Shown here: positions 17,654 through 47,550 of the stretch, piece after piece
How the letters are laid out: every line of letters begins with the position of its first letter
Numbering within the stretch: the first letter of the stretch is position 1
Virus record (IMG/VR): IMGVR_UViG_3300027834_000005
Span: 186,001-250,000 of that record
Length of the DNA stretch: 64,000 bases
Reading direction: 5' to 3' (one strand)
Program-made: the position numbers and the translations under genes
The notes under the pieces: generated by a model
What the model saw: only the letters and a program-made list of their open reading frames with translations
Databases searched by the model: none
What the model was told of the DNA's origin: nothing

Positions 17654-17659
17654 AATTTA

Positions 17660-17690
17660 GCCTCCATAGTGTAGCGGTAGCACAGCTTTA
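17660..17690 (+). pseudogene. 5' half of a tRNA truncated at the HNH cassette
   Basis: GCCTCCA TA GTGT AGCGGTA GCAC; no matching 3' half nearby. Confidence 0.55.
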
Positions 17691-17729
17691 ATAGTGTATG
17701 AGTAGGAAAATGATAAATACTTATAAACT

Positions 17730-18230: not shown

Positions 18231-18232
18231 AT

Positions 18233-18324
18233 GCTTCGATAGCTCAATTGGTAGAGCGACGGATTTATATCCCGTGCAGTAGATAACTGGTCGGTTGGGG
18301 GTTCGAATCCCCCTCGAAGTACCA
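18233..18324 (+). tRNA. tRNA-Ile(TAT) with extended variable arm
   Basis: GCTTCGA/TCGAAGT acceptor; ACGGA TTTATAT CCCGT. Confidence 0.7.
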
Positions 18325-18328
18325 ATTT

Positions 18329-18400
18329 ACGCCAATGGATTTATACCTCGTAACCACAGATAATGGGCTGTCGCAGGTTCGAATCCTGCTAGGTGTACCA
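18329..18400 (+). pseudogene. D-armless degenerate tRNA-Ile(TAT)-like copy
   Basis: GATTTATACC, same AGATAA extra arm, intact T-arm and ACCA, no D-arm. Confidence 0.5.
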
Positions 18401-18405
18401 TTTTA

Positions 18406-18482
18406 GCTCTTGAAACATTTATATGGATGATGTCCCGTTTTGTAATCGGGGGAACGCGGATCGTTACCGTGCTGGAGCACCA
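18406..18482 (+). tRNA. tRNA-Thr(TGT), atypical
   Basis: CCCGT TTTGTAA TCGGG; GATCGTTA T-loop. Confidence 0.7.
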
Positions 18483-18633
18483 AATAGAAAAAGTTGTAAA
18501 AAAAAGATTGACTCCTTATGAAATAGATGATATAATGATAAGGCGCTTACAACAACAGTTAGACATCTGCATTAGGTCTGTATCCCTAATCGAAGAAGCA
18601 GCAGTGAAGGTCTGAAGATACAGTGATTTTTTA

Positions 18634-18721
18634 GGTAGATTGGCAGAGTGGTGAATGCAGCGGGTTGCTAACTCGTGATCCTTAACGGGGTCCATAGGTT
18701 CGAATCCTATATCTACCGCCA
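18634..18721 (+). tRNA. tRNA-Ser(GCT)
   Basis: GCGGG TTGCTAA CTCGT, long variable arm. Confidence 0.95.
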
Positions 18722-18727
18722 TGTTTT

Positions 18728-18802
18728 ACACGGGTAGCTCAGAGGCAGAGCGGTGGTGTTACATACCATAGGTCGAGATTTCGAAATTCTCTCCGTGTAC
18801 CA
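18728..18802 (+). tRNA. tRNA-Val(TAC)
   Basis: GTGGT GTTACAT ACCAT. Confidence 0.9.
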
Positions 18803-18809
18803 ATTTTTT

Positions 18810-18884
18810 GCACTTGTAGCTGAGATGGATTAGCGACGGATTGAAGTCCCGTATAGAAAGGATCGTTACCTTTCAAGTGCACCA
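18810..18884 (+). tRNA. tRNA-Phe(GAA)
   Basis: ACGGA TTGAAGT CCCGT. Confidence 0.85.
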
Positions 18885-19024
18885 AATTTCGCTAGTACTG
18901 GGTTCTGCCCAAGGATCGCAACCTTGGCTTAGTATTAGCGCAATATTTTGACACTACTGTCCCATGGGGGATATCCTCGAAAGAGGCAGCATGCTCTAAG
19001 TGTGCGGTGTCAAAAACTAATCAG

Positions 19025-19076
19025 CTGGCCTGATGAGTCCTAACAGGGACGAAACGAGAGTAAATCTCGTCGCCAG
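19025..19076 (+). ncRNA. Type I hammerhead ribozyme; predicted cleavage after C19071 at tRNA-Tyr +1
   Basis: CTGGC-CTGATGA-GTCC..GGAC-GAAA-CGAGA..TCTCG-TC-GCCAG: complete core and three stems. Confidence 0.95.
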
Positions 19077-19154
19077 AGTAGCAGCGTAATTGGTAGCGCC
19101 CCGCACTGTAAATGCGCATTCCCGTTGTTGGTTCGAATCCAACCTTTGGCACCA
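19072..19154 (+). tRNA. tRNA-Tyr(GTA)
   Basis: GCCAGAG/CTTTGGC acceptor; CCGCA CTGTAAA TGCGC. Confidence 0.85.
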
Positions 19155-19174
19155 AATTAAAAAAAACTAATCAG

Positions 19175-19225
19175 TCCGCCTGATGAGTCTTATTAGAGAC
19201 GAAACATCTTACGAGATGTCGCGGG
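19175..19225 (+). ncRNA. Type I hammerhead ribozyme; predicted cleavage after C19220 at tRNA-Tyr +1
   Basis: TCCGC-CTGATGA-GTCT..AGAC-GAAA-CATCT TACG AGATG-TC-GCGGG. Confidence 0.95.
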
Positions 19226-19303
19226 AGACGTACCACTGGAAGGTATATCGGGCTGTAACCCCGACGCGAAAGCATATAGGTTCGAGTCCTATCTCCCGTA
19301 CCA
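19221..19303 (+). tRNA. tRNA-Tyr(GTA)
   Basis: GCGGGAG/CTCCCGT acceptor; TCGGG CTGTAAC CCCGA. Confidence 0.85.
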
Positions 19304-19345
19304 AATTACATAGGTAAGTAATAGCCTGACATATTACAAAGTTTT

Positions 19346-19421
19346 GGACCCTTAGCTCAATCGGGAGAGCACCGAGCCGATAACTCGGAGGTAGTTGGAT
19401 CGAAACCAACAGGGTCTACCA
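19346..19421 (+). tRNA. tRNA-Ile(GAT)
   Basis: CCGAG CCGATAA CTCGG. Confidence 0.9.
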
Positions 19422-19428
19422 ATTTAAT

Positions 19429-19505
19429 TCCGTGGTGGAGCAGAGAGGTAATGCGCTTGGCTGTTAACCAAGATTTCGCTGGTTCGATCCCAGCCCACGG
19501 AGCCA
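19429..19505 (+). tRNA. tRNA-Asn(GTT)
   Basis: CTTGG CTGTTAA CCAAG. Confidence 0.9.
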
Positions 19506-19546
19506 ACATGAGGAATGTTCACCTCTATAAAAACGAGTGAAGTTTA

Positions 19547-19621
19547 GGTGCTATAGCTCAGAGGCAGAGCAAACCGTTGTCTGCGGTAAGGTCGGGATTT
19601 CGAAATTCCCTAGCATCGCCA
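19547..19621 (+). tRNA. tRNA-Asp(GTC)
   Basis: ACCG TTGTCTG CGGT, GCCA. Confidence 0.8.
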
Positions 19622-19627
19622 ATTTTT

Positions 19628-19703
19628 ACCAGCGTAGCTCAATCGGGAGAGCGGGTCCCTGTCAAGGATCAGGTAGCGAGATCGAAACTCGTCGTTGGTG
19701 CCA
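19628..19703 (+). tRNA. tRNA-Asp(GTC)
   Basis: GGTCC CTGTCAA GGATC, GCCA. Confidence 0.9.
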
Positions 19704-19709
19704 ATTTAT

Positions 19710-19801
19710 GTATCAGAGCAAGTATGGACGTCCATACACTGTGCTGTCTCAAGTCGTCAAGTCATGGGATCGGGTGGTTCAATACCACTGGTGATGCGCC
19801 A
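19710..19801 (+). ncRNA. tRNA-like RNA / degenerate tRNA
   Basis: GTATCA/TGATGC stem, T-arm GTGG TTCAATA CCAC, GCCA end, non-canonical middle. Confidence 0.4.
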
Positions 19802-19807
19802 ATTTAT

Positions 19808-19886
19808 CGGGATATAGCTCAGTCTGGTGTAGAGCGCATGCTTTGGAAGCTTGAGGCCGTAGGTTCGAATCCTACTATCCCGACCA
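19808..19886 (+). tRNA. tRNA-Pro(TGG)
   Basis: CGGGATA acceptor, TTTGGAA loop. Confidence 0.9.
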
Positions 19887-19892
19887 ATTTAA

Positions 19893-19971
19893 CGGAATGT
19901 AACTCAGTCTGGTTTAGAGTGACGGTCTTGGATACCGTTGGCCACTGGTTCGAATCCAGTCATTCCGACCA
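19893..19971 (+). tRNA. tRNA-Pro(TGG)
   Basis: ACGGT CTTGGAT ACCGT. Confidence 0.9.
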
Positions 19972-20269
19972 ATTAGTTGTTGACGTCAACATTAAAAAGC
20001 GTTAGAATACGTCCCTTAGAGGATATTAATATGGATTGTAAGCAGATATGTCATAACATCAGATATAACCACATATATGAGGATGAAGATGGTAATCCCG
20101 TGGATGGTTATGCAAAAGGACATAGGATCGTATCTAGTGAGCCGTATTGTACTGTTTACCAAAACGAGAAAATGAAGCGTAACGGCGATGAAGTTGTTCC
20201 GTTAGCAAAATGTAAAGCCGATGATTATGCTGAGACAATCGTGTTTTATTATGACGGTAAGATGATGGT

Positions 20270-22021
20270 ATGAGATTTGAAGATTTAGCCAGACAGCCAA
20301 TGCGCCACGGTGATGAAAGCGTAAATTATATGTTAGTATATCATGGAGATGAAACATGGGTTCCTAGATTTAAAAGTGGTGCTATAATGACCATTGAGGC
20401 AAATCACGTTGATTATTGGAGTTCTAGTGTAACTCTCTTTAAGTATGAATGTAACGGCGTACCTGCCGATATAAGATGTGCGTCTACGGAAGATCGGTTT
20501 GTAGTTACGACTAAAATGAAAAAAGATATAGTAAGTAGCGTATACGTAAAGTGTTTTTACCCGTTAGATGTAGGCAGTCCGTTTTATAGTGATGAAGATT
20601 TATTTGAAGCCAAGTTATCTGGCGACTATGAAGCGATAAGAAAGACTTTGAGAAAAGAATTTAATGCTTGGAAAAAGGTGAACTAAGTGAAATTTGAAGA
20701 CTTAGCTAATATTAAAATGTGTGACGTCGATACTAATGTGCAGTACCTTTGTGCATACAACTCTAGTTACACTATGTCAAGTAAGCCATGTACATTAAAT
20801 CCCATGGCCATAGATGATTTTTGGTCTCAATATGTATTTGAAAAGGCGCATAAAAATGGCAGTAACTACTCACTTGGCCAAAACGGAAGATTAGTAATAA
20901 CTACTAAGATGAAAACTGAAAACCTTAATGAGCATGGTTATACCTTTTTAAATGGACACTATGTAACGTGTTTTTATCCAATAGTTGCTGATAGTCCTTA
21001 CTATAGTAATGAAGAATTATTCGAAGCTAAATTAACAGATAACTTTGTGCCGTTAATTAAGAAATTACGTAAAGCTTTTTATCATTGGAAAAAGGTGAAC
21101 TAAGTGAAATTTGAAGTATTAGCAAAGACGGAAATGGTACGTGCCGATGAGAGTGTTGATTATATCCTCGTGTACCATTCAAGTGATAAATGGTATCCGA
21201 CCACATATAAAAGAGGGACGATAGTAAAACTATCAACTACTACTGATATATATGCATCGCCATATACGTTTACTCACGTAGTTGAGCCAGACATTATCCA
21301 TACTATATCTGGTCGTAGCCACTCAGATAGATTGATAGTGACTACTAAGATGAAGCGTAGAGTTAGAAATAATATTGGGTGGAGGACATTAGATGAAGAA
21401 TCGGTTAAATGTTTTTATCCTTTAGTTGCTGATAGTCCTTATTATACTGATGAAGATTTGTTTGCCGCTAAGATCAGTAATGATTATGATGTAGTGTTTA
21501 AGAAGTTAAGAAAAGCGTTCAATGATTGGAAAAAAATTAATTGACAACGACCTTAAACTCTTATATTATATTATCTCTTTCAAGAGGTGCACGTTATGGA
21601 CTTTGCAGAATTAGCGGATATAAGAATCAGAAACGCTGACACTATATTGAAGTATATGGTAGTGTATGATTCAGTATGGCAAGAAGGCCGAGACAAGAAT
21701 ATGCCTGATGGTGACGTCGGCACAATCACTAGAACTATAGCCAAGCATACCAACTCGGAAATGTTGACTATTAGTGCCAAGGGATTGAAACATAGCATGC
21801 TTATACCCTCCGTCGTAGACTCATTGGTCGTAACGGCCAAGATTAAAAAAGAACGTAGGGGTGAATATCTGGATGTATCTGCCAAGTGCATATATCCATT
21901 AGTAGAAGGAAGTCCTTACTACGAGGATGAAGAGCTATTTGAGGCCAAGTTGTCCGGTGACTATCGTAAGTTGTACAAGAAGTTAAGAAAAGCATTTAAT
22001 GCTTGGAAGAAAGAAAACTAA
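20270..22021 (+). repeat. Tandem array of four paralogous ~140 aa genes (20270, 20687, 21104, 21587)
   Basis: Shared MxFEDLA start, VTTKMK, KCFYPL..SPYYxDEELFEAKLSGDY..LRKAFNxWKK; variable middles. Confidence 0.85.
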
Positions 22022-22348
22022 TATGATTAATGTATACAGTAGAAGGCATATTAGATCTGACGCAACGCCACATGAAGTTATTGATGCGTACGTTAGTAAG
22101 ATTACCGGATACAAGTGTCTTCTGCTTAAACCACGTGATGGACCTAAATGTGGTATGTACCTTGAGACTCTGTATCAGTTTAACAAGAAAGAAGATATAG
22201 ATGGTATATATGATGCTATAGTAGAACAAGATGAAGAAGCGTTGATGTTCTATGAGTTATCAACGTAGTATAGAATTCTAACGCTGACGTTGTGTTGAGT
22301 GTTACATAGAAAAATTTGTCCTCTATGTGTAAAAGGAAAAGGTTCCAA

Positions 22349-22424
22349 GGGTCTCGACGCATATTGGTACGCGGACGGATTGTGATTCCGTTGGAACTCG
22401 GTTCGAAACCGAGGTGACCCTCCA
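22349..22424 (+). tRNA. tRNA-His(GTG)
   Basis: ACGGA TTGTGAT TCCGT; A-1:U73 instead of G-1:C73. Confidence 0.85.
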
Positions 22425-22440
22425 AATTTAAAGAGTATAG

Positions 22441-22827
22441 GTGATTAAAATGTTTTATGGAGAATTCGATACGTGGGATAATGTATTGTCCCAGTTTGGC
22501 GTAGAAAAGTCGGAAGTTTCCAATGCGGTGCCTATATTTGCAGCATATGATATAGACGGGTATGAAGGAACTGCTTCGGTTGTTTATGTTGAAGATGGAA
22601 AGTTCTGGTTAGTTGACGGATCACATTGTTCTTGCTACGGCTTAGAAGATCAGTGGGAACCTGAAGAGACTCCTTATGAAGTATTGGAGCACTTGGCAGA
22701 AAAAGGAAACTACATGTTCTCTGTGTACAAAAAAGAGTTCATGGCGACGATTAATTTTATTAAGGAAAGCGGTTTCGACAACGTTGACCCTAAAGAATTA
22801 GAATTTGTATTAAAATTATCATTGTGA
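22441..22827 (+). CDS. Hypothetical phage protein
   Basis: 128 aa ORF with GSHCSCYGLEDQWEPE motif. Confidence 0.65.
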   Translation: MIKMFYGEFDTWDNVLSQFGVEKSEVSNAVPIFAAYDIDGYEGTASVVYVEDGKFWLVDGSHCSCYGLEDQWEPEETPYEVLEHLAEKGNYMFSVYKKEFMATINFIKESGFDNVDPKELEFVLKLSL

Positions 22828-22931
22828 TAAAAAATTAAAAATAGGAAGGTAAGATATGAAATCAGGCAAACTTATCGTCTTATAGGATACCCTAATGTGT
22901 TGGTGATCCCGTAAGACGTAAAACAACTTAC

Positions 22932-23007
22932 GGGGTGGTAGCTCAGCGGCCAGAGCAGTTGGCTTTTAACCAATTCGTCGAGGGTTCGAATCCCTCTCGC
23001 CCCACCA
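22932..23007 (+). tRNA. tRNA-Lys(TTT)
   Basis: GTTGG CTTTTAA CCAAT. Confidence 0.95.
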
Positions 23008-23018
23008 AACACACATTA

Positions 23019-23094
23019 GGGATATTAGCTCATCAGGTAGAGCAACTGGCTTTTAACCAGTAGGTGCTCGGTTCGAGACCGAGATATCCCACCA
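23019..23094 (+). tRNA. tRNA-Lys(TTT)
   Basis: ACTGG CTTTTAA CCAGT. Confidence 0.95.
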
Positions 23095-23095
23095 A

Positions 23096-23172
23096 GGGAC
23101 GTTAGCTCACGTTGGTAGAGCAGGGAGCTTTTAACTCTCTGGTAGTCGGATCGTCACCGACACGTCCCACCA
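23096..23172 (+). tRNA. tRNA-Lys(TTT)
   Basis: GGGAG CTTTTAA CTCTC. Confidence 0.9.
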
Positions 23173-23655
23173 AATTTTATTTGACAGCGTCATTAATTCA
23201 TGAGATTATATAGACTCTAAAGATTGGGAGAAGATCATGAACGGATCGTACTGGTAAAATTGTATGAGAAAGACTCAAGCAAATCCATGGGCAGCGTCTG
23301 CGTACAGAGAGCGTGTGGAGAACGGTAGACCTACTGGTGTCATTGTTAAGGATTTCGTAGCTTATCCTAATTGTGAAACCTTTGACTGGAAACATATTGA
23401 GGAGATCACCAAGTGAACACTTTAGAAAACGTGATAGCATATCAAGAGAAAGTCCGCGATACGTTCGGTATAGAAAGCAATTGCGACGTAGGGCAATCGT
23501 ATAAAGAGTTGGGTGAGAAATACGCATATGTATTAGACGTCACCGAAGAAGAAAAGTTACAAGTAAACCATGCCGTATTTGTAGACGGAGTGGTAATAGA
23601 ATTTAAAGCACTTAACCCAAGTATCTGGGAAGAAGTGAATATTTAAAAAGTTTAC

Positions 23656-23729
23656 AGCGCGTTGACAGAGAGGCTATGTGGTCGGCTGCAACCCTTCATA
23701 CGCCGGTTCGAATCCGGCACGCGCTTCCA
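23656..23729 (+). tRNA. tRNA-Cys(GCA)
   Basis: CTGCAAC loop, U73, weak anticodon stem. Confidence 0.8.
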
Positions 23730-23737
23730 ATTTTAAT

Positions 23738-23816
23738 TGCGGTTTTAGTTAGGTCAGGTGACCTTCCGAGGCTCATAACCTCTGGGTGATGCGTTCGATA
23801 CGCGACTCCGCTACCA
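23738..23816 (+). tRNA. tRNA-Met(CAT), degenerate initiator-like
   Basis: GAGG CTCATAA CCTC; mismatched acceptor. Confidence 0.55.
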
Positions 23817-23821
23817 TTTTT

Positions 23822-23893
23822 ACCTCTGGGACATAGGATGTCAGACGGATTCCAAACCCGTCTTACTGGGATCGTTACCTAGCAGGGGTGCCA
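23822..23893 (+). tRNA. tRNA-Trp(CCA)
   Basis: ACGGA TTCCAAA CCCGT; short D-arm; GCCA. Confidence 0.8.
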
Positions 23894-25150
23894 AACACTA
23901 AGGATATACCCATGAACGTTTTAACTATGACAGCAGTTACTAGTCGTTCGTTCGGCACGCAAGACGGGAACCTTATCGAAGAAAAAGAAACGTACCACAT
24001 ACATCCTTACACTGAAAGAAAAGGATTTGATCAGATGTACGGTATACTCGATGAAGACTACGAACATGTAGTCACTGTGTTGTTTCGATCATTATGCGTT
24101 ATATTCGGCGAAGAAGAAATATTTACTAAAGTGCTACTCGGTGAATTGGAACCTAATGTAAATCATGCATAATTCATATAAAGCCGCTAGAGAAGTAGGC
24201 ATGAACTCATTCACGTGCGTATGCACTAAGCCTACTAGATTCTTTTCTTTGAGTCCGTTAAGGGTAATAAAAAAAGATTGTATTTATTTCATTAAGCCTA
24301 GTATTCCTTTTCAGATTGACCTACCAGAGCCGGTAGTGTACGCAGTAGGCGTATTAGAAAAGATACATGGTGACCCAGACAGAAAGTTTTTTAAAGTGTT
24401 ATGTGAAGTGGATTACCAAGGTTTATTAAAAGTGTTTGATGAAGAAGATATATTTCAGCAAGTACTACTCGGTAACGTAGTAGCGGAGTGAGATATGATT
24501 ACAAAAAGAAACGGTTTTTTCATTAAGCGTTGCGCTGATTGTAGTGAAGAGTTATCGCCTACTGAGTATTTTTTCTGTCATGACTGTGAAGAGTGGCATC
24601 GACGGGCGGAAGAGATGGCTATGGAAGCTGACTTCGGCGATGAAGATGATACGTAAGTAGACTTTAATATAAATGTCTGGTATAATTAATGTGTAAAGTG
24701 ATAATCGGTAGGTAAAAAGTATGTGTGATGTTTCTAGTACTATTGAGAGCACTGTTATTCAGTGTGGCGATATTTCATTACAGGACATGGTTGCGATTGT
24801 CGTGGCTGGTTATGTGAATGAAAAAGAAGAAACTTATAGAGGCAGTAATCGCGCCGACGAATATAAAAAAGACGAGTTCTATAGATGCTTATCTAGTCTA
24901 AGTGCCACAATCAGTGACGGGCCAGACTTCGGTGGGCTGGATCGAGTTGTGCATTATCGCGCAGTAGTTGATATTGGACCTCGATTCAGAAGCTTCTTAA
25001 AAATATGTGAAGACATGAACGTGATTGTGACTGTTGATCCACTACGTATGTTAGATCTTACAGTATTGGATCGTAAGATACAGAAGTTCAATGAGTGGGC
25101 AGGCAAGGCAATCCTGACACAAGTACAAGAAGACTATAAGTAAGAACAAC

Positions 25151-25226
25151 GCTGTTGTAGCTCCAAAGGTAGAGCGCGTCTTTGGTAAAGACGAGGTTGC
25201 TGGTTCAAGCCCAGCCTTCAGCACCA
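25151..25226 (+). tRNA. tRNA-Thr(GGT)
   Basis: CGTCT TTGGTAA AGACG. Confidence 0.9.
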
Positions 25227-25230
25227 AATT

Positions 25231-25304
25231 GCGGTATTAGCTCAGAGGCAGAGCGTTGGGCTTCCACCCCATGTGCAGGATTTCGAAATTCCTATACCGC
25301 TCCA
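25231..25304 (+). tRNA. tRNA-Gly(TCC)
   Basis: TGGG CTTCCAC CCCA, TCCA. Confidence 0.85.
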
Positions 25305-25467
25305 AAATTACATTGGCATACTCTTAGCGTTAAAACTGGGCGGACAAATATACGCTTTGCCTAAAGAGACGATATGTAATATACTGTGCCTCGGACGGTT
25401 CCTAGAGGATAAAACACAAGGGTTATTAAGCGTAATTGCAGTCCCTAATTGGAGCCACCATTTTTAT

Positions 25468-25544
25468 GCGGTATTAGCTCACGTTGGTAGAGCACCGGCT
25501 TGCCAAGTCGGAGGTAGTGGGATCGTCACCCACATACCGCTCCA
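25468..25544 (+). tRNA. tRNA-Gly(GCC)
   Basis: CCGGC TTGCCAA GTCGG. Confidence 0.95.
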
Positions 25545-32827: not shown

Positions 32828-34495
32828 ATGACGGTACGATTACTAACAAAACCAGCATTTGAAGAAAAAGAGATTATCCAAGCACCCGCTTTATTGGATT
32901 TTTATAAAGCATTCCATCATCTTGCCTATCAAGACGGTGTGGAAGAGGTTGTTATCAACTTCACGGGTCGCAGCGGTAACCACAGTAACATCAAAGGCGG
33001 ATCTACGTACATGTGGGCCGGTCTTCAATCATTTATCAATGAAATCATTGTAGGTGAATGGAATAAGTTCTTTGCGGCAACTAAAGAACAGGCAGTAGCT
33101 GATTATAAGCGTGTTAATGAAGCCGGTTTAGGCGTAGTATGCGATACTAGCCATCTTGAAGCACTACATGACCTTGGATATATGCCTTTAGAGTTTAGAG
33201 GTCTATTGGAAGGGGTAGAAGTGCCATACGGCGTGGCAGCAATGACTTGCCGCAACACAATTGCCGAGTTTTACTTCCTACCGAACATGATTGAGACTAT
33301 CATGTCTGATGAAATCTGGCCAGTTCAGACTTCATTGACTACTGCGACTGAGTACATGCGTACTTTGAGTGAATTTGCCGCAATCGATGGTACTCCAGAA
33401 GGGTTACTTGGGTTCCTTATCCATGATTTCTCTATGCGCGGCATGATGGGTGGCAGAATGACAGGTGGTGCTGCATTATCTGGCATGGGACACTTGATGT
33501 CTGGCTTTGTAGGAAGCGACACAGTGCCTGCTGCATTGGCTCTGGAGAAGAACTACGGCGCTTACCTAGGCTTAGATCGTCCTTACGAAACAATCGCCTC
33601 AGTGAACGCTACGGAGCACAGTGTGCAGTGTTCTTTCAATAACAATGACTTGGCTTACTACCGTCACTGTATGAAAGTATCGCCTACTGGCATCCTTAGC
33701 TTAGTATCTGACGGTTATGACTTCTGGAAGCTTATTGCTGAAGTATTACCGGCACTTAAAAACGAGATTATGTCTCGTGACGGTAAAATCGTTATCCGTC
33801 CAGATAGCGGTGACCCAGCAGACGTGATTTGTGGTCTTCGTGAGAATATTGACTACCGTCGTACCAAAGATGGTAAGGCATACGCGATGAAATACTGGAA
33901 AGGTAGCGCCTTTATGGGTGCTGAGCAGACCGAATACGGTAAAGTAGTTAAAGAAGCAGCTCCTACTATCCCTGATATGGAAGTGAAAGGTTTAATTCAA
34001 GTATTATGGGAAATGTTTGGTGGTACTGAGTCTGGTGTTGTTGGCGGTAAGGTCTATAAGTTCTTAGACTCTCATATCGGCGCGATTTACGGCGATTCTA
34101 TCACTCTTGAGCGTCAACGTGACATTTATACACGTTTACACGCAAAAGGCTTCGCGGTAGGTAACATTGTATTGGGTGTTGGTTCTTTTACTTACCAATA
34201 TGTTACTCGTGATACTCATGGGTCTGCTGTTAAAGCGACTAATATGATTTTGAAAGGCGTAGATACTCCTATCAGCAAAGAAGTTAAGGGTGATGCGGTT
34301 AAAAAGTCTGCGAAAGGTCGTTTAGTTGTTAAGCGTATCGATAATAAGTACGTTCAATTCGATGAAGCTACTCCTGCGGGTGTTGAGGCTGACGATAATC
34401 AGCACCAACGAGTATGGATGGACGGTGAATGGATCAGAATCCAAACACTTAAGGACGTTCGTACTAATGTTAAGGAAACTTTAGAACCAGCTTGA
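32828..34495 (+). CDS. nadV: Nicotinamide phosphoribosyltransferase-like protein (Nampt/Namat)
   Basis: DFYK..H, HDFSMRG, GSDT, ATEHS, VSDGYD, IRPDSGDP, IYGDSIT, KKSAKG motifs. Confidence 0.92.
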   Translation: MTVRLLTKPAFEEKEIIQAPALLDFYKAFHHLAYQDGVEEVVINFTGRSGNHSNIKGGSTYMWAGLQSFINEIIVGEWNKFFAATKEQAVADYKRVNEAGLGVVCDTSHLEALHDLGYMPLEFRGLLEGVEVPYGVAAMTCRNTIAEFYFLPNMIETIMSDEIWPVQTSLTTATEYMRTLSEFAAIDGTPEGLLGFLIHDFSMRGMMGGRMTGGAALSGMGHLMSGFVGSDTVPAALALEKNYGAYLGLDRPYETIASVNATEHSVQCSFNNNDLAYYRHCMKVSPTGILSLVSDGYDFWKLIAEVLPALKNEIMSRDGKIVIRPDSGDPADVICGLRENIDYRRTKDGKAYAMKYWKGSAFMGAEQTEYGKVVKEAAPTIPDMEVKGLIQVLWEMFGGTESGVVGGKVYKFLDSHIGAIYGDSITLERQRDIYTRLHAKGFAVGNIVLGVGSFTYQYVTRDTHGSAVKATNMILKGVDTPISKEVKGDAVKKSAKGRLVVKRIDNKYVQFDEATPAGVEADDNQHQRVWMDGEWIRIQTLKDVRTNVKETLEPA

Positions 34496-39244: not shown

Positions 39245-40669
39245 ATGAATATTAATTCAATTCATAATTCTAACGAAAAAACAGACACTATCGTCATTCT
39301 GGTAGATTCATCATACGTCGGCGACAAGATCATTGCGGCTCTTATTGAGAGCAAAGATTTCAAAGTGGAAACGGCAGGAACTACACATTTAACTGTAGAA
39401 ACTTCCGAAGACGATGTTTTACAGAAAACATTATACGTGGCTACTGGTTCGTTAGATGAATTCAATGAATCCACAGGTAATATCGACGTAGTGGCTAAAT
39501 CTATTGTCGCGTATCTTAAAGGTTCACCATCTGACATATTAACAGTGGCTGCAGAAAACAATGCAGTACGCGATTGTGGCCTTGAAGCTTTATGTTCATC
39601 ATTGGTCATTGCTGACTATAACTTTTCCCTAGAAGATAAGCCATCGCCGCTTACTATCAATATTTTGTTTGATGACGAAGCAAGCGCTACTCAGGCAGGC
39701 CCTTCAGTGAGTGATGGGGTAGATGCCGGTAATGCAATCAATTATACGCGTCGTTTAGGTGACCTACCAAGTAATGTCTGTACACCTACATACATGGCGC
39801 GTCAGGCGGTGTCCCAATTCAAGCAAGATAATGTGCGTGTTAGTGTCATTGGCGAAAGTGAAGCAAAAGAGCTTAACATGGGCGGTTTCATGAGTGTTAC
39901 TCAGGGTTCCGATGAAGAAGGCAAAATCATCATCTTCGAATATACCGGCGATGCGAATAACTCAGATACGGTTGCGTTAGTTGGTAAAGCGGTTACATTT
40001 GACAGCGGTGGTATCAGTATTAAGCCAAGTGCATCAATGGAAGAAATGAAATATGACATGTGTGGCGGTGCTACGGTATTTGGTGTGATTAAAGCTGCGG
40101 CTGATATGCAATTGCCTGTTAACCTTATTGGTGTCGTAGGCGCGGTAGAAAATATGCCATCTGGCAACGCTACTCGTCCAGGTGATATCATCAATATGAT
40201 GTCCGGTAAAACTGTTGAAGTTACTAATACGGATGCCGAAGGTCGTATGGTGCTGGCTGATCTTTTAACCTATGTTGGTGAAAATTATAAGCCTACTACG
40301 GTTCTAGATTTAGCAACGTTAACTGGTGCGTGCTGCGTAGCTTTAGGTGAACATGCCGCTGGTATCTTTACTGAAGATGATGCTCTGGCCACAAGCCTAT
40401 ACGATTCTGGTCAGAAAGTGAATGACCGTGTGTGGCGCTTACCAATGTGGGAAGACTACAACAAGCAAATGGATAGTGATTTTGCAGACATGGGTAACTC
40501 AGGTAAACGTGGTGCCGGTGCTAGTACAGCTGCGTGCTTCCTTAACCGTTTTGCTAGCGACTACGACTACAAATGGGCACATATTGACATTGCTGGCGTA
40601 GCGTGGAAAGGTAAAGCTACTGGTCGTCCTGTTAAGATGTTGCTTGACTACTTGACTACGGGTAAGTAA
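39245..40669 (+). CDS. pepA: Leucyl aminopeptidase (M17)
   Basis: VGKAVTFDSGG, MKYDMCGG, ENMPSG, NTDAEGR, DLATLTGA, WAHIDIAG. Confidence 0.95.
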   Translation: MNINSIHNSNEKTDTIVILVDSSYVGDKIIAALIESKDFKVETAGTTHLTVETSEDDVLQKTLYVATGSLDEFNESTGNIDVVAKSIVAYLKGSPSDILTVAAENNAVRDCGLEALCSSLVIADYNFSLEDKPSPLTINILFDDEASATQAGPSVSDGVDAGNAINYTRRLGDLPSNVCTPTYMARQAVSQFKQDNVRVSVIGESEAKELNMGGFMSVTQGSDEEGKIIIFEYTGDANNSDTVALVGKAVTFDSGGISIKPSASMEEMKYDMCGGATVFGVIKAAADMQLPVNLIGVVGAVENMPSGNATRPGDIINMMSGKTVEVTNTDAEGRMVLADLLTYVGENYKPTTVLDLATLTGACCVALGEHAAGIFTEDDALATSLYDSGQKVNDRVWRLPMWEDYNKQMDSDFADMGNSGKRGAGASTAACFLNRFASDYDYKWAHIDIAGVAWKGKATGRPVKMLLDYLTTGK

Positions 40670-42540: not shown

Positions 42541-42762
42541 ATGATTGAGATAGATTTTCATGGATGGCTTCCTGCTGCTGCCGAAGATAAGATCCATTCG
42601 ATGATAGGCGAAGCCAGACACGTAGGTGTCCCTACCCATATCAAGTTCATAACTGGGAATGGTAAAATAAAACAGATTGTTATTGATATAGCCAATACTT
42701 ATGGTGTTCACTGTCAAGAGCAACTAGGAAATAGAGGCGCTTTAATAGCGTTAATAGAATGA
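42541..42762 (+). CDS. Stand-alone Smr-domain protein
   Basis: IDFHG, FITGNG, N.GALIA motifs. Confidence 0.75.
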   Translation: MIEIDFHGWLPAAAEDKIHSMIGEARHVGVPTHIKFITGNGKIKQIVIDIANTYGVHCQEQLGNRGALIALIE

Positions 42763-43325
42763 AAGAATCAGAAGAGATACCAAAGCACGACAATTATTTA
42801 GTATTTGATTTAGAAGCTACTTGTTGCAATAAAGACAGTTTGGATCGTGACTCTATGGAAATCATAGAGATAGGCGCGGTTATGGTTGACGGTAAAACTT
42901 TCGAAATAATAGATGAGTTCTGTACATTTATTAAGCCGGTGAGAAATCCAACTCTCACTCCGTTTTGCAAAAGGTTGACGACAATCACACAGATAGAAGT
43001 TGACACTGCGCCAGAATATAAAGAAGCATTAGAATTATTCAAAAACTGGTACGCTGGTTACGAAGATGTGCTAATATGTTCTTGGGGTAACTATGACAAG
43101 AAACAATTTTCGCAAGATTCTCGTTTCCATGGTGTTGAGTCCCCAACAGCGGATAACCACTGTAATATGAAAAGAATATTCTCATTAGTGAAAGGTGTAA
43201 AAAGACGCTTCGGCGTTAAGAATGCCCTTCTTGAACTGGGGATGGAATTTGACGGTACTGCCCATCGCGGAATAGATGACGCTAGAAATACAGCGAGGTT
43301 GGCAAAGTACACATTTGGTGACTAG
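42759..43325 (+). CDS. ERI1/KapD-like DEDDh 3'-5' exonuclease
   Basis: FDLEATC, EIIEIGAV, LTTITQ, SWGNYD, HRGIDDARN. Confidence 0.9.
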   Translation: MKESEEIPKHDNYLVFDLEATCCNKDSLDRDSMEIIEIGAVMVDGKTFEIIDEFCTFIKPVRNPTLTPFCKRLTTITQIEVDTAPEYKEALELFKNWYAGYEDVLICSWGNYDKKQFSQDSRFHGVESPTADNHCNMKRIFSLVKGVKRRFGVKNALLELGMEFDGTAHRGIDDARNTARLAKYTFGD

Positions 43326-43759
43326 ATATGTCGTACAAGAAAAACGAAATTCACCCGTGGACAGTGATAGGAATGACGCTCACTATGCCCATTATGCTAT
43401 CTGTTATCGTGACAGGAAGTAATATATTACTGCATTTATGGGCGGTACTTGGGATGGTCACCGTTCTGGCATACGGCGTGTGTAGTAGGAAGTATATAGG
43501 GAAAGAACCATATAACGCAGAAGCGGACATCACAGTGGCGTTTAGTGTTATTTTCGTATGTTATATGTGTGGGCCAGCTTTTGGGTGCCAATTTTTCTAT
43601 GATAACCGCATGGAATTTAAGTCATACGCCAGAATAGCTAACAGGGGATATATATTCCCTACCAAAAAGAATAAAGAAATACATTTCCTAAAAAGATTAA
43701 ATGGGGAATTAAAAGAATAAACATTTGCATGTGATATGAAATGTATGTTATAATGCTCA

Positions 43760-44090
43760 GCATGAAAAGAATTTTTCTCTATAATAAGAGAAATGAAAGA
43801 ATAACTGTATGAAACTAGGATGAGCAAGGAGACACGCGGGTTCGACTCCCGCCGCTTCCACCAAAGTGATATTAAACGTGAAGTTTTTTGGATCTGTTAT
43901 GGGGGCGTTTTGGATTCGACCTTCTTGTGATTTGAGGTGGACAGTTCGGCAAATGTGAAAGTCGTTAAGAGAAACCCTTTTGGGTAAACTCTCATAGAAA
44001 CACTAAATATAATTGCTAATGAAGAATTATACGCTCAAGCTGCCTAATCGCGCTTGATGAGGTTAGAGTCACCTTATTATCCAACGACAC
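43760..44090 (+). ncRNA. ssrA: Two-piece (circularly permuted) tmRNA; tag (A)ANEELYAQAA*
   Basis: 3' TLD piece GCGGGTTCGACTCCCGCCGCTTCCACCA ends at 43863; 5' piece GGGGGCG..GGATTCGAC starts at 43901; tag ORF 44015-44047; terminator hairpin 44093-44117. Confidence 0.9.
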
Positions 44091-44130
44091 ACGAATGGGG
44101 ACTTAATGTCCCCATTCACTTATCAGGGAT

Positions 44131-44481
44131 TTGATAATGGACAAGCACGGCCCAGTTTTAATTAATATGATACGTAGAACAGTACCGAAATTGATAGCGG
44201 AAGATCTAGTGGGTGTACAGCCTATGATATCACCTATTGCCCGATGGGAAAAATATCATGTAGTTTGGGTAATCACGACAAGCGGTGAGTTGGTATGTAA
44301 TGGCGATGTGTATATGCTAGCGAATTACGTCAACGACAAATTCACATGTAACCTAGGTGAAGTGCTAAGCGAAGAAGAGTATTTCCTAAGAGAGCTTGAT
44401 GGCTCCAATAAAGAATTAGATAATATTACTGACGTAGGTAAGGTTTTTTCCCTAAAGACTAGATATAACAGAAACATATAG
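44131..44481 (+). CDS. Small protein carrying a T4 gp23 Gol-region-like segment
   Basis: PVLINMIRRTVPKLIAEDLVGVQPMISP ... GKVFSLKTRY. Confidence 0.65.
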   Translation: MIMDKHGPVLINMIRRTVPKLIAEDLVGVQPMISPIARWEKYHVVWVITTSGELVCNGDVYMLANYVNDKFTCNLGEVLSEEEYFLRELDGSNKELDNITDVGKVFSLKTRYNRNI

Positions 44482-44534: not shown

Positions 44535-45413
44535 ATGAAAGATAGTTATATATTAAACTGTGGTCCTAGTGATAAGAACGGGACCGATTGGGTATATCCA
44601 GTAGGCGCTGCGCCTTCCGAGTTACCAGAGAATTTTTCTAGAAGAAAATTTACCAGAAACGTATCCAATCAAGGAACCGTAGGTTCGTGTGTAGGCCAAA
44701 CATTAAGCGTGGTATTTAATGATACTACCCAATGTGAGTCAGTTAGTCTTTCTCCTATGTGGATATATAAGAGAGCAAAAAGGCATGACTATTGGGCAGG
44801 CGAAGATTACTCCGGCACGTCCATCTCAGGGGCCTGTTTGGCGCTTAAGAAGGAAGGCGCGTGTAAGGAGGAGTTCTATCCTTATCATGGCTCTACGGAG
44901 GATTACGAGCCTCTGACGGGTGCTATAGCTGACGCAGATAGAAGAAAGGTAATAGCGTTTTATAATTTGGCTGTTCACAGAATAGACGAGATAAAGAATC
45001 TATTACTCAAAGAATCACTGGCTTGTTCCATTGCCGTACATTCTGGATTCTATGCCGCTAAAGATGATGGGATAGTTGTTGAAGCAGGGTACGAAGCGAG
45101 TAAGTATCAAGGCGGTCATGCAATGGCCATAGTCGGATGGAAAGTTATAGACGGTATACTACATTGGGAATTCCAGAATTCATGGGGTGATAATTGGGGA
45201 GACGATGGTTTCTGTTTCATTCCTCATACGTTATTAGAGAATATAAAATCGTCTAACGTGTATTATCTAGTGACTGAAAATGAAGACAATGTTAGAATTG
45301 AAAAAGAGAAAAGAAAACGTAGTAAGTTAATGAGTATAATCGCGTATGTGCCGGAGCTGTTAGTTGAAGGCATGAGGTACTGCATTACTTATATAAAGAA
45401 TAAGTTTTCATAA
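44535..45413 (+). CDS. Papain-family (C1) cysteine peptidase
   Basis: NQGTVGSCVG, GGHAMAIVGW, QNSWGDNWGDDG. Confidence 0.9.
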   Translation: MKDSYILNCGPSDKNGTDWVYPVGAAPSELPENFSRRKFTRNVSNQGTVGSCVGQTLSVVFNDTTQCESVSLSPMWIYKRAKRHDYWAGEDYSGTSISGACLALKKEGACKEEFYPYHGSTEDYEPLTGAIADADRRKVIAFYNLAVHRIDEIKNLLLKESLACSIAVHSGFYAAKDDGIVVEAGYEASKYQGGHAMAIVGWKVIDGILHWEFQNSWGDNWGDDGFCFIPHTLLENIKSSNVYYLVTENEDNVRIEKEKRKRSKLMSIIAYVPELLVEGMRYCITYIKNKFS

Positions 45414-45946: not shown

Positions 45947-46498
45947 ATGAAAAGGTTCAAAGAGAAAAAAATAGATTTTGAGGCATTGAAGCAATATATC
46001 AAAGACTCTAGTGAGAGTTCTGGTGTGTATATCGGTGGAGACTCAAAAACATTCAAGCATGACGGTGAGAGATACTGTGCATATTGCATTTCTGTAATTG
46101 TACATAAAGACTCTAAGCATGGCGGTAAAGGTTTCTATCATGAGATCATCGAAAGGGACTATGGCGACATTAAAGCCCCTAGAGCAAGACTTATGAATGA
46201 AGTGTATAAGGTAGTTGACGTTGCTAATGAGCTTGTAGAGTATATTGGCGATAGAAAGTTCGAAATACATTTGGACATCAATGCTTCTGAGAAGTATAAG
46301 TCTAATACAGCTATGAATGAGGCCTGTGGTCTTGTTAAAGGTGTATTTGGTGTTGAGCCAAAGATTAAGCCAGAGGCATGGGCTGCATCGACTATTTCTG
46401 ATAAATATGCTGTGAGAACTGCAAAAAGTTCAAAAAACACAGTTAAAAAGAAGAAGGCTACCAATCGTGAAAATAGAACAAGTGCTAAACGAAAATAG
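45947..46498 (+). CDS. RNase H-like protein (YkuK/DUF458 family)
   Basis: YIGGDS, RLMNEV, EIHLDIN, IKPEAWAAS..D. Confidence 0.75.
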   Translation: MKRFKEKKIDFEALKQYIKDSSESSGVYIGGDSKTFKHDGERYCAYCISVIVHKDSKHGGKGFYHEIIERDYGDIKAPRARLMNEVYKVVDVANELVEYIGDRKFEIHLDINASEKYKSNTAMNEACGLVKGVFGVEPKIKPEAWAASTISDKYAVRTAKSSKNTVKKKKATNRENRTSAKRK

Positions 46499-46962: not shown

Positions 46963-47550
46963 ATGAAACTAAGTGATAATTTTTACTTGAGTGAGTTTCT
47001 TGAATCAGAAACCGCCGTAGAACTAGGCGTGGAAGATGAGCAGAATAACCCACCACAAAATGTAATAGAAAATCTTACATATCTTGCAAAAACAACACTG
47101 CAGCCATTACGTAGCTATCTCAACTATGGGGTAGGCCTCAATAGTGGCTGGCGTTGTAAAGCTGTTAATGACGAAGTCGGTTCTTCCGATGTGTCTCAGC
47201 ACTTACACGGTGAAGCGAGCGATATTGATATCAGTGACGCTATGCTAACTGATACTGATGCTGTTGTCAAGCATGTTATTGAAGATTTAAACCGACGCAT
47301 AGAACGTATATGCGGGAAAAGACCAAGAGCGGACGTAAATTCTAATTACTACGCATGGGCTTACTACTGTATCCATCTGGATGAGCTTGATATCGATCAA
47401 GTGATTCATGAGTATGGAAGTGATGGTAAACCTAGTTGGATACACGTAGCCTCTTCAGGCTCAAAAGACAGACGCAGAATCACCATCAAACGATCAGGTG
47501 ATAGATATGTGGATATGACATTAGAGCACGCCTTATTGTTAGGCTGCTAA
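46963..47550 (+). CDS. Peptidase M15A (endolysin-like)
   Basis: LSDNFYLSEF, NSGWRC..VN..VG, SQHLHGEASDI, WIHV. Confidence 0.85.
   Translation: MKLSDNFYLSEFLESETAVELGVEDEQNNPPQNVIENLTYLAKTTLQPLRSYLNYGVGLNSGWRCKAVNDEVGSSDVSQHLHGEASDIDISDAMLTDTDAVVKHVIEDLNRRIERICGKRPRADVNSNYYAWAYYCIHLDELDIDQVIHEYGSDGKPSWIHVASSGSKDRRRITIKRSGDRYVDMTLEHALLLGC

What the first reader, a model, noticed from the sequence alone, without database searches (positions are those of the whole stretch)
43760..44117. Circularly permuted two-piece tmRNA in a phage
Seen: the acceptor/T-arm piece with CCA (ends 43863) precedes the 5' GGGGGCG piece (43901) across a 37-nt spacer; G3:U70 is present; tag ANEELYAQAA. Established: permuted tmRNAs are typical of Alphaproteobacteria and of some cyanobacteria and betaproteobacteria. 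Its presence here is informative about origin or host.
Basis: partly seen in the sequence, partly recalled or inferred. Interest (0 to 1): 0.6.

Follow-up and report, generated by a model that had tools for sequence, protein, structure and literature searches.

The report
Two-piece tmRNA gene in jumbo phage
A 347-kb marine jumbo phage carries an intact, circularly permuted (two-piece) tmRNA gene for rescuing stalled ribosomes; the call is correct, but marine phages are already known to carry such genes, and it says little about the host.

Summary
ARAGORN calls a permuted tmRNA at 43770-44138 with tag ANEELYAQAA. Rfam matches tmRNA_permuted (81.6 bits, cut-off 47) and beta_tmRNA (85.5 bits, cut-off 84).

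- CCA ends at 43863.
- A 37-nt spacer follows.
- GGGGGCG starts at 43901.
- G3:U70 is 43903:43857.

An unguided fold recovers the acceptor stem, T arm and P2 (z = -2.99). Most helices are kept through changes on both strands.

The genome is a complete ~347.1-kb marine jumbo phage with 37 tRNAs. It is distantly related to Pseudomonas phage PA5oct. It has no SmpB, so the RNA must use the host's SmpB, AlaRS, EF-Tu and RNase P.

Phage two-piece tmRNAs are already documented, mostly from marine phages. My own scan found 60 IMG/VR contigs with the permuted signature. This is therefore a new, very divergent member of a known kind.

It is beta-like, but at most 55% identical to any bacterial or viral tmRNA aligned here. 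The exact tag occurs in none of 185,579 species genomes.

The host inference is weak. Bacterial beta-type tmRNAs found here sit mainly in high-GC Rhodocyclaceae, whereas this phage is marine and 40% GC.

The phage also encodes ClpX and ClpP, and its ClpX differs at residues that read the ssrA tag in E. coli.

The parts
43725..43754 (+). Putative sigma-70-type promoter: TTGCAT (43725-43730), 18-nt spacer, extended -10 TGnTATAAT (43746-43754). The predicted transcript start is about 43760-43762.
   Evidence: Read from the sequence and a pattern match. The consensus scan did not list it because the -35 hexamer matches only 3 of 6 bases. This is inference and no transcript start was mapped.
43774..43793 (+). 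5' leader hairpin of the acceptor piece (7-bp stem 43774-43780 with 43787-43793).
   Evidence: Present in both the MFE and centroid folds. The 3' half of the stem is partly kept in the related phage seen in run X2, which has a shorter loop (loose end at 43780). Its role as a 5'-end stabiliser is inferred.
43803..43831 (+). 5' strand of helix P2, which holds the two pieces together: 43803-43808, 43814-43816 and 43824-43831.
   Evidence: Co-fold of the two pieces and the Rfam structure alignment.
43836..43852 (+). T arm: 5-bp stem GCGGG/CCCGC with loop UUCGACU.
43853..43863 (+). 3' strand of the acceptor stem (43853-43859), discriminator A (43860) and encoded CCA (43861-43863). This is the 3' end of the acceptor piece.
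43864..43900 (+). 37-nt intervening segment that must be removed from the precursor.
   Evidence: Its removal is inferred from how two-piece tmRNAs are known to mature.
43901..43928 (+). 5' tRNA-like domain, the start of the coding piece. It holds the acceptor 5' strand GGGGGCG (G3 = 43903), the D-loop analogue UUUUGGAUUCGAC, and the P2a 3' strand 43921-43928.
43929..43946 (+). Rest of the P2 3' strand (43932-43933, 43936-43938, 43941-43946).
43947..43993 (+). PK1 region. It holds the 4-bp stem CGGC/GUCG (43947-43950 with 43961-43964), then a nested hairpin (43968-43992) of about 27 nt that the family consensus lacks.
   Evidence: The Rfam RF04321 alignment shows the stem and the insertion, and the fold shows the hairpin. 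The X2 relative keeps the hairpin and turns the G-U pair of the stem into G-C (loose end at 43991). The second stem of the pseudoknot could not be identified.
44015..44047 (+). Tag reading frame: resume codon GCU (44015-44017), ten codons giving ANEELYAQAA, and stop UAA (44045-44047).
   Evidence: The frame aligns codon for codon, without gaps, to the 10-codon beta consensus.
44058..44092 (+). Post-tag stem-loop region. It carries the loop motif CCUUAUUAUCCAA (44072-44084), which matches the beta-family loop consensus CCUUGuuACcaAA.
   Evidence: The stem is weak: 2 of 6 model pairs are non-canonical, and the MFE fold draws a different stem.
44093..44117 (+). Terminal 10-bp hairpin at the likely 3' end of the coding piece. 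No U-tract follows it.
   Evidence: The terminator scan found no intrinsic terminator.

Best explanation
This is a real and probably functional phage ssrA gene of the circularly permuted, two-piece form.

Shown:
- The gene order is acceptor piece, then a 37-nt spacer, then the coding piece.
- It has a complete tRNA(Ala)-like domain: a 7-bp acceptor stem with G3:U70, a T arm, and an encoded ACCA end.
- Helix P2 joins the two pieces.
- It has a 10-codon tag frame with an Ala resume codon and a stop.
- The phage genome is complete and has no SmpB.

Inferred mechanism:
1. One precursor is transcribed from a sigma-70-like promoter at 43725-43754.
2. Host RNase P cuts between 43900 and 43901, which makes the 5' end of the coding piece.
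3. The 37-nt trailer left on the acceptor piece is trimmed back to CCA by 3'-5' exonucleases. These could be host enzymes or the phage DEDD exonuclease encoded 450 bp upstream.
4. The two pieces stay paired through the acceptor stem and P2.
5. Host AlaRS charges the RNA, and host SmpB and EF-Tu deliver it to stalled ribosomes.
6. Translation resumes on GCU and adds (A)ANEELYAQAA.
7. The Ala-Ala-COO- end of the tag marks the product for Clp-type proteolysis.

The likely benefit is to keep ribosomes free in a cell whose mRNAs are being destroyed while a 347-kb genome with its own 37 tRNAs is expressed.
For: Two independent detectors agree: ARAGORN and two Rfam models above their cut-offs.

The unguided fold recovers the tRNA-like domain and P2, with z = -2.99.

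In the Rfam alignment, helices are kept through changes on both strands relative to the family consensus:
- 5 of 7 pairs in P2a.
- 3 of 5 pairs in outer P2.
- Acceptor pair 6 (U-A in the consensus, C-G here).
- The outer pairs of the terminal hairpin.

The gene is 41% GC, like its phage, against 53-63% for bacterial beta-type genes. That fits long residence in a phage with the structure maintained.

Related phages keep a tmRNA too:
- A related phage in another marine sample (X2) keeps the T arm and acceptor end, the PK1 stem and the region from 43991 onward, with no indels listed across the tag.
- The more distant relative L139 (4 shared proteins, 31-57% identity) carries a strong beta-type permuted tmRNA at 146 bits.

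The genome is complete. The JGI contig wraps round with a 347,087-bp period, and an independent ENA assembly is 347,153 bp. It has no SmpB, RF-1/ArfB or SspB.

Precedent: two-piece tmRNAs are reported in many marine phages (PMC9004378), and tmRNAs in huge phages (PMC7162821).
Against: - There are no RNA data. No RNA run holds the locus, so expression, cleavage into two pieces, charging and tagging are all untested.
- The Rfam permuted-model score (81.6 bits) is about half that of bacterial genes (139-167 bits).
- Six pairs of the middle part of P2 in the beta model are not formed.
- The second stem of PK1 could not be found.
- No intrinsic terminator follows the gene.
- The promoter is a sequence reading only.
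- The tag differs from every other tag seen here at position 3 (E in place of D, Q, S, T, P or A) and at the third residue from the end (Q in place of the usual L, I, V or M).
- The compensatory-change counts come from an alignment fitted to the model structure, which leans towards that structure.
Confidence: 0.8

Rival explanations
1. The gene marks the host. On this view the phage infects a bacterium of the beta-type two-piece tmRNA lineage (Rhodocyclaceae and kin) and captured the host's ssrA recently.
For: Of the three subtype models, only the beta model matches full length and above its cut-off. The tag has the same 10-codon frame as the bacterial ANDE[RQ]FA[LIV]AA tags. The post-tag loop motif is shared with the beta family.
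Against: - Identity to 115 bacterial beta-type genes is only 48-55%.
- The beta score beats the general permuted model by only 4 bits, so little of it comes from beta-specific parts.
- The exact tag is in none of 185,579 species genomes.
- The bacterial carriers found are mostly high-GC Rhodocyclaceae, named largely from freshwater, wastewater and groundwater samples. The phage is marine and 40% GC.
- CCA is encoded here, whereas the beta consensus has ACCc.
- Melnitz shows that a phage's tmRNA type can differ from its host's.
Confidence: 0.12
2. The gene is a decaying passenger: a host gene picked up once and no longer used.
For: The model score is low compared with bacterial homologues. The middle part of P2 is not formed. 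The tag is atypical. The acceptor-piece leader and P2 5' strand diverge faster than the flanking genes in the X2 relative.
Against: Every essential element is intact, and helices are kept by changes on both strands. The tag frame is open with a proper resume codon and stop. The gene's GC content has drifted to the phage's level without loss of structure. Relatives also carry a tmRNA.
Confidence: 0.07
3. The RNA is active but has been repurposed. In one version it rescues ribosomes while its changed tag escapes or redirects proteolysis, for example towards the phage's own ClpXP. In the other it competes with the host tmRNA for SmpB.
For: - The tag is unique among about 175 tags seen here, with E at position 3 and Q at the third residue from the end.
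- The phage encodes ClpX above both NCBIfam equivalog cut-offs, and a ClpP.
- The phage ClpX differs at 3 of the 6 residues that read the ssrA tag in E. coli: T199 aligns to G, R228 to N and H230 to Q (residue roles from PMC7652416).
- A phage tmRNA-like RNA that inhibits host tmRNA is on record, from phage DS6A (PMC11915505).
Against: [quoted passage not shown] It may therefore be an ordinary degron.
- PA5oct ClpX has also lost the RKH motif although PA5oct has no permuted tmRNA. The ClpX change is therefore not tied to this tag.
- The DS6A RNA lacks a tag frame, whereas this gene has one.
Confidence: 0.1

Closest known systems
Betaproteobacterial two-piece tmRNA (Rfam RF01850; found here in Rhodocyclaceae such as Azonexus/Dechloromonas, Thauera and Accumulibacter)
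   Same: - The same permuted order and the same joining helices.
- A 10-codon tag that aligns without gaps.
- A shared post-tag loop motif and a terminal hairpin.
- Full-length match above the cut-off.
   Different: - Only 48-55% identical.
- 41% GC against 53-63%.
- The middle part of P2 is not formed, and there is a 27-nt extra hairpin before the tag.
- CCA is encoded rather than ACCc.
- The acceptor stem is GGGGGCG with an extra G4:U69 wobble pair.
- The tag is ANEELYAQAA against ANDE[RQ]FA[LIV]AA.
- It is carried by a phage.
Two-piece tmRNAs of marine phages (OM43 phage Melnitz, Pelagibacter phage Mosig and others; PMC9004378)
   Same: A phage-borne permuted ssrA in a marine phage, with no stated phage SmpB. 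The same proposed role of keeping the hijacked translation machinery running.
   Different: - Melnitz's gene is alpha-like and carries a glutamine riboswitch. This one is beta-like, and Rfam finds no riboswitch in the window.
- This phage is a 347-kb PA5oct-related jumbo phage, not a T4-like pelagimyophage.
- It is at most 55% identical to any of the viral permuted tmRNAs from the 60 IMG/VR contigs found here.
Permuted tmRNA of viral contig L139 (IMGVR_UViG_3300046001_006998)
   Same: It belongs to a related phage, with 4 shared proteins at 31-57% identity. It is also a beta-type permuted tmRNA.
   Different: - L139's gene is much closer to the bacterial consensus (146 bits although cut by the contig end).
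- It lies beside homologues of genes that sit 3-7 kb into this genome, not at the same locus.
- Its tag begins AKANTGEVTVSGKNVKL and runs off the contig.
Two-piece tmRNA of Caulobacter (Keiler, Shapiro and Williams 2000, as cited in PMC9004378)
   Same: The functional precedent that a permuted gene yields two base-paired RNAs active in trans-translation.
   Different: It is the alpha type. The alpha model matches only the T-arm region here, at 22 bits against a cut-off of 50.
tmRNAs and SmpB in huge phages (PMC7162821); one-piece tmRNAs of mycobacteriophages
   Same: Large phages that carry many tRNAs also carry ribosome-rescue genes.
   Different: This phage has the RNA but no SmpB, and the gene is permuted rather than standard.

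Membership tests
tmRNA, permuted (two-piece) form (Rfam RF04321) | Covariance-model score at or above the curated cut-off | tested here: met
   81.6 bits against a cut-off of 47, E = 4.5e-14, all 213 model positions matched.
tmRNA, permuted (two-piece) form (Rfam RF04321) | Permuted gene order: the 3' tRNA-like half ending in CCA lies upstream of the 5' half, with an intervening segment between them | tested here: met
   43824-43863, then a 37-nt spacer, then 43901-43928.
tmRNA, permuted (two-piece) form (Rfam RF04321) | tRNA(Ala)-like domain: 7-bp acceptor stem with G3:U70, a T arm with a GUUCGAnUC-type loop, and discriminator A plus CCA | tested here: met
   G3 43903 pairs with U 43857. The T arm is 43836-43852. 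ACCA is 43860-43863.
tmRNA, permuted (two-piece) form (Rfam RF04321) | Helix P2 joining the two pieces | tested here: met
   8 bp (43824-43831 with 43921-43928) and 6 bp (43803-43808 with 43941-43946) in the unguided co-fold. 5 of 7 P2a pairs differ from the consensus on both strands.
tmRNA, permuted (two-piece) form (Rfam RF04321) | Tag reading frame with an Ala resume codon, a stop codon and a C-terminal Ala-Ala | tested here: met
   GCU at 44015 and UAA at 44045; the tag ends AQAA. The third residue from the end is Q, not the usual hydrophobic residue.
tmRNA, permuted (two-piece) form (Rfam RF04321) | Pseudoknot PK1 upstream of the resume codon | tested here: inconclusive
   The first stem is present (43947-43950 with 43961-43964). 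No convincing second stem was found, and an extra hairpin occupies the region.
tmRNA, permuted (two-piece) form (Rfam RF04321) | Maturation into two RNAs, alanine charging, and tagging activity with SmpB | not testable with these tools
   No RNA run holds the locus. The phage has no SmpB of its own.
Beta subtype (Rfam RF01850) | Score at or above the curated cut-off, and better than the other subtype models | tested here: met
   85.5 bits against a cut-off of 84, full length. The alpha model scores 22 bits (cut-off 50) and the cyano model 23.4 bits (cut-off 70). The margin over the cut-off is only 1.5 bits.
Beta subtype (Rfam RF01850) | Subtype-specific structure: the middle sub-helices of P2, the post-tag hairpin and the terminal hairpin | tested here: inconclusive
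   The terminal hairpin and the post-tag loop motif are present. Six middle-P2 pairs and 2 of 6 post-tag stem pairs are non-canonical.
Beta subtype (Rfam RF01850) | Close sequence kinship with bacterial members | tested here: not met
   48-55% identity to 115 bacterial genes, which are about 72-81% identical to each other in the sampled pairs.

The most novel reading that the evidence does not exclude
The phage may run a private tag-and-degrade system. In this reading, a tmRNA whose tag (E at position 3, Q at the third residue from the end) is found in no bacterial genome searched is matched to the phage's own ClpXP. The phage ClpX has changed at three of the six residues that read the ssrA tag in E. 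coli. Rescued products would then be handled differently from host ssrA-tagged proteins: either spared from host ClpXP and SspB, or fed preferentially to the phage protease and on to the neighbouring aminopeptidase for amino-acid recycling.
Probability: 0.08. Interest if true: 0.65.

Novelty: new member of a known kind. Interest (0 to 1): 0.3.

Why it matters
The finding adds a very divergent, beta-like two-piece tmRNA to the known set of phage tmRNAs. It lies in a complete 347-kb marine jumbo phage that also carries 37 tRNAs, ClpX and ClpP but no SmpB.

It is a further caution that a phage's tmRNA subtype is a poor guide to its host.

The pairing of a unique tag with a ClpX that differs at ssrA-reading residues is cheap to test in vitro. 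It is the only part that could become more than routine annotation.

Tried and rejected
Searches that led nowhere:
- **Isolated phages:** blastn of the locus and of 20 kb around it against 50,697 phage records gave no match. The tool may leave out near-identical records.
- **Exact tag:** a degenerate DNA pattern for the tag gave 0 hits in IMG/VR and 0 in 185,579 species genomes.
- **Syntenic relatives through neighbouring proteins:** this gave nothing useful. One distant hit, L015, has tRNAs but no tmRNA in the fetched 10 kb.
- **Word search with the downstream 114-aa ORF:** it found only itself.
- **Metagenome scan with the acceptor-stem signature:** it returned only this same phage. That result did show that the assembly wraps round.
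- **Reads:** only DNA contigs were available, so processing could not be examined. Run X2 holds a relative, but its full tmRNA sequence could not be retrieved.
- **Taxonomy of genomes reached through loci:** it is not reported, so the order-level survey shows only that strong permuted matches are rare (4 of 151 genomes), not which families have them.
- **Atlas look-up of the PepA-like gene for a host hint:** uninformative, returning Bacteroidota or Pseudomonadota.

Ideas rejected:
- **attP-type tmRNA fragment from an integrating phage:** the whole gene is present, not just a 3' piece.
- **8-bp pairing of 43781-43788 with the post-tag loop 44073-44080:** the 5' partner is absent in the X2 relative.
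- **Bacteroidota host:** Shine-Dalgarno-like motifs precede 50% of long ORFs against 11% background.
- **ClpX loop change co-evolved with the tag:** PA5oct ClpX also lacks RKH and PA5oct has no permuted tmRNA.

No alternative genetic code was used.

Full report
**Observation**

ARAGORN finds 35 tRNA genes on the + strand of the window and one permuted tmRNA at 43770-44138 with tag peptide ANEELYAQAA. Its detailed output gives:
- the 3' tRNA-like domain at 43824-43863, ending ACCA;
- a 37-nt intervening segment at 43864-43900;
- the 5' tRNA-like domain at 43901-43928, starting GGGGGCG;
- the tag frame at 44015-44047.

The raw sequence shows that G 43903 pairs with U 43857, so G3:U70 is present. 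G 43904 with U 43856 is a second wobble pair.

Rfam matches beta_tmRNA (RF01850) at 43760-44118 with 85.5 bits against a cut-off of 84, E = 2.5e-24. It matches the general tmRNA_permuted model (RF04321) at 43803-44047 with 81.6 bits against a cut-off of 47.

**More than chance**

Folding 43760-44120 with no constraints gives -99.2 kcal/mol against -83.1 +/- 5.4 for shuffles. That is z = -2.99, and none of 100 shuffles folds as well. The fold contains the acceptor stem, T arm and P2.

Co-folding the two presumed pieces gives the same helices:
- acceptor stem, 43853-43859 with 43901-43907;
- T arm, 43836-43840 with 43848-43852;
- P2a, 43824-43831 with 43921-43928;
- outer P2, 43803-43808 with 43941-43946.

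In the Rfam alignment, several helices differ from the family consensus on both strands and still pair:
- 5 of the 7 P2a pairs;
- 3 of the 5 outer P2 pairs;
- acceptor pair 6;
- the outer pairs of the terminal hairpin.

That alignment is fitted to the model, so these counts lean towards the structure. The independent fold agrees with them.

**The genome**

The window is bases 186001-250000 of a 347,232-bp IMG/VR virus record. The source JGI contig of 410,284 bp holds the tmRNA locus twice, 347,087 bp apart and 100% identical. The assembly therefore wraps round and the genome is closed at about 347.1 kb. An independent ENA assembly is 347,153 bp.

The genome has these features:
- It is 40% GC.
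- It has 37 tRNAs for 19 amino acids (all but Trp) and this one tmRNA.
- Its tail sheath is closest to the Pseudomonas phage PA5oct group (42% identity over the 459 residues that lie in the window) and then to Rak2-like jumbo phages.
- It comes from a marine metagenome. A relative at 80-95% identity is present in a marine sediment metagenome.
- Shine-Dalgarno-like motifs precede half of its long ORFs against 11% background. That fits a proteobacterial rather than a Bacteroidota host.

**Subtype and relatives**

The alpha model matches only the T-arm region (22 bits) and the cyano model scores 23.4 bits. Only the beta model fits, but by just 1.5 bits over its cut-off and only 4 bits more than the general model.

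Beta-specific likenesses are the gap-free 10-codon tag alignment, the post-tag loop motif (44072-44084) and the terminal hairpin. The differences are unformed middle-P2 pairs, an extra hairpin of about 27 nt before the tag, and an encoded CCA where the beta consensus has ACCc.

Most are Rhodocyclaceae: Azonexus/Dechloromonas, Thauera, Accumulibacter, Propionivibrio, Sterolibacterium. Their tags are ANDE[RQ]FA[LIV]AA, and their genes are 48-55% identical to this one and 53-63% GC.

In a sample of 151 genomes of the same order, only 4 had a strong permuted match.

In IMG/VR, 60 contigs carry the permuted signature. Most are 36-49% GC with tags beginning AND, and none is more than 55% identical to this gene.

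One of them, L139, shares four proteins with this phage (31-57% identity). It carries a strong beta-type tmRNA (146 bits) that is cut by the contig end. A beta-like tmRNA therefore seems to have been in this phage lineage for some time, and the copy in the window is the more diverged one.

**The tag**

No tag among the roughly 175 bacterial and viral tags collected here has E at position 3 or Q at the third residue from the end. ARAGORN reports "Tag not identified". The exact tag is absent from IMG/VR and from the species genomes.

It does keep the terminal Ala-Ala. This is reported as the element most important for ClpXP degradation of ssrA-tagged proteins (PMC7652416).

**Partners**

The complete genome has no SmpB, no RF-1-domain rescue factor and no SspB. 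The RNA must therefore work with host SmpB, AlaRS, EF-Tu and RNase P. This is inferred.

The phage does encode:
- ClpX: 404 aa, scoring 429 bits on NF003745 (cut-off 359) and 393 bits on TIGR00382 (cut-off 370.75);
- ClpP: 193 bits to PF00574. It scores above the prohead-protease models but below the ClpP equivalog cut-offs.

In the alignment to E. coli ClpX, the pore-1 GYVG motif is kept. T199 aligns to G, R228 to N and H230 to Q. These three are among the six residues reported as critical for ssrA recognition.

PA5oct ClpX (42% identical) has also lost the RKH motif, and PA5oct has no permuted tmRNA. Lak phage ClpX keeps RKH and Atu_ph07 ClpX has RKN. The loop change therefore belongs to this phage ClpX lineage and is not tied to the tag.

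**Neighbourhood**

Genes near the tmRNA:

| Coordinates | Product |
|---|---|
| 39245-40669 | Leucyl aminopeptidase |
| 42759-43325 | DEDD (RNase_T/KapD-like) 3'-5' exonuclease |
| 44535-45413 | Papain-family peptidase |
| 45947-46498 | RNaseH_like protein |

The exonuclease could help trim the 37-nt trailer and the many tRNA precursors. This is a suggestion only, because the family is broad.

**Expression signals**

These are inferred:
- TTGCAT, an 18-nt spacer and TGnTATAAT at 43725-43754, which the consensus scan did not list.
- A leader hairpin at 43774-43793.
- A terminal hairpin at 44093-44117 with no U-tract. A ribosome-binding site and the ATG of the next ORF follow at 44137, so read-through is likely.

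**Known or new**

Permuted tmRNAs in phages are documented:
- 53 of 133 unique phage tmRNA structures were two-piece by ARAGORN, and 50 of those came from marine or aquatic phages (PMC9004378).
- The tmRNA database lists 79 bacteriophage sequences (PMC11915505).
- Huge phages are reported to carry tmRNAs and SmpB (PMC7162821).

This locus is a new and unusually divergent member of that known kind.

Its value for host assignment is low. The beta-type carriers found are mostly high-GC, and largely from non-marine samples by their record titles. The Melnitz case also shows a phage's tmRNA type differing from its host's.

**Limits**

- There are no RNA data, so processing and activity are untested.
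- The relative's full tmRNA could not be fetched.
- The covariation evidence rests on a model-fitted alignment plus an independent fold.

Noticed in passing
G000:C1:292024-293238 (L228:1492-2706) and G000:C1:303592-304236 (L230:3592-4236), outside the window: The phage encodes a full ClpX, above both NCBIfam equivalog cut-offs, and a ClpP-like protease. ClpX keeps GYVG, but E. coli T199, R228 and H230 align to G, N and Q. PA5oct ClpX also lacks RKH, Lak phage ClpX keeps it, and Atu_ph07 ClpX has RKN.
   Followed up: partly
JGI contig JGI24723J26617_10000007 (L143, L144); ENA contig ERZ27237540:k141_2081355 (L235): The 410,284-bp source contig repeats about 63 kb of itself with a 347,087-bp period. 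The genome that IMG/VR labels 'linear, 94% complete' is therefore a closed assembly of about 347.1 kb. An independent assembly is 347,153 bp.
   Followed up: yes
window 42759-43325 (+): A DEDD 3'-5' exonuclease (Pfam RNase_T 90.7 bits; best NCBIfam model KapD, below its cut-off) lies 450 bp upstream of the tmRNA and downstream of the tRNA arrays. It is a candidate for 3' trimming of tRNA and tmRNA precursors.
   Followed up: partly
window 39245-40669 (+), 44535-45413 (+), 46963-47550 (+): Three peptidase genes lie close to the tmRNA: a leucyl aminopeptidase (482 bits, above the equivalog cut-off), a papain-family C1 peptidase, and an M15 peptidase.
   Followed up: no
window 44137-44481 (+): A 114-aa ORF starts 19 nt after the tmRNA terminal hairpin. 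Only its first ~35 residues match the N-terminus of T4 major capsid protein Gp23 (PF07068). It has no other homologue in the word search.
   Followed up: partly
window 7278-25544 (+); also G000:C1:100979-101298: There are 35 tRNA genes in an 18-kb stretch and 37 in the genome, covering 19 amino acids (no Trp). tRNA-Ile(UAU) at 18233-18324 is 92 nt, unusually long for a class I tRNA. A partial tRNA-like match lies at 19083-19143.
   Followed up: no
window 32828-34495 (+): A nicotinamide phosphoribosyltransferase gene (PHROG 448, E = 2e-149).
   Followed up: no
L139:8392-8667 (IMGVR_UViG_3300046001_006998): The related phage contig has a beta-type permuted tmRNA with a clear TTGACA / TATATA-type promoter. 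Its atypical long tag begins AKANTGEVTVSGKNVKL and runs off the contig end.
   Followed up: partly
L055, L077, L093 (genome contigs): Three genomes not labelled Rhodocyclaceae (a Comamonadaceae MAG, an unnamed betaproteobacterial MAG and Pseudaquabacterium terrae) carry permuted tmRNAs with odd tags: ANDDVYLVTGTRG, ANQDVYHVQAYG and ANQDVYHVEQMPLAA. They are the most divergent of the set.
   Followed up: no
G001:C1:3974388-3974971 (Dechloromonas sp. ARDL1): Two permuted-tmRNA matches lie about 150 bp apart on opposite strands, at 159.9 and 113.2 bits.
   Followed up: no
window 43834-43866, run X1: The source marine sample holds other contigs, one of 1,015 nt and several very deep 31-33-mers. 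They match the T arm, acceptor end and CCA-AAG with one mismatch and then diverge. Another tmRNA with nearly the same 3' domain is therefore abundant in the sample. It could be the host's or another phage's.
   Followed up: no
L231 (Pseudomonas phage PA5oct, MK797984.1 166751-173929): In PA5oct, clpX lies next to genes annotated as ribosomal protein S21 and ClpS adaptor. No permuted tmRNA was found in that genome.
   Followed up: partly
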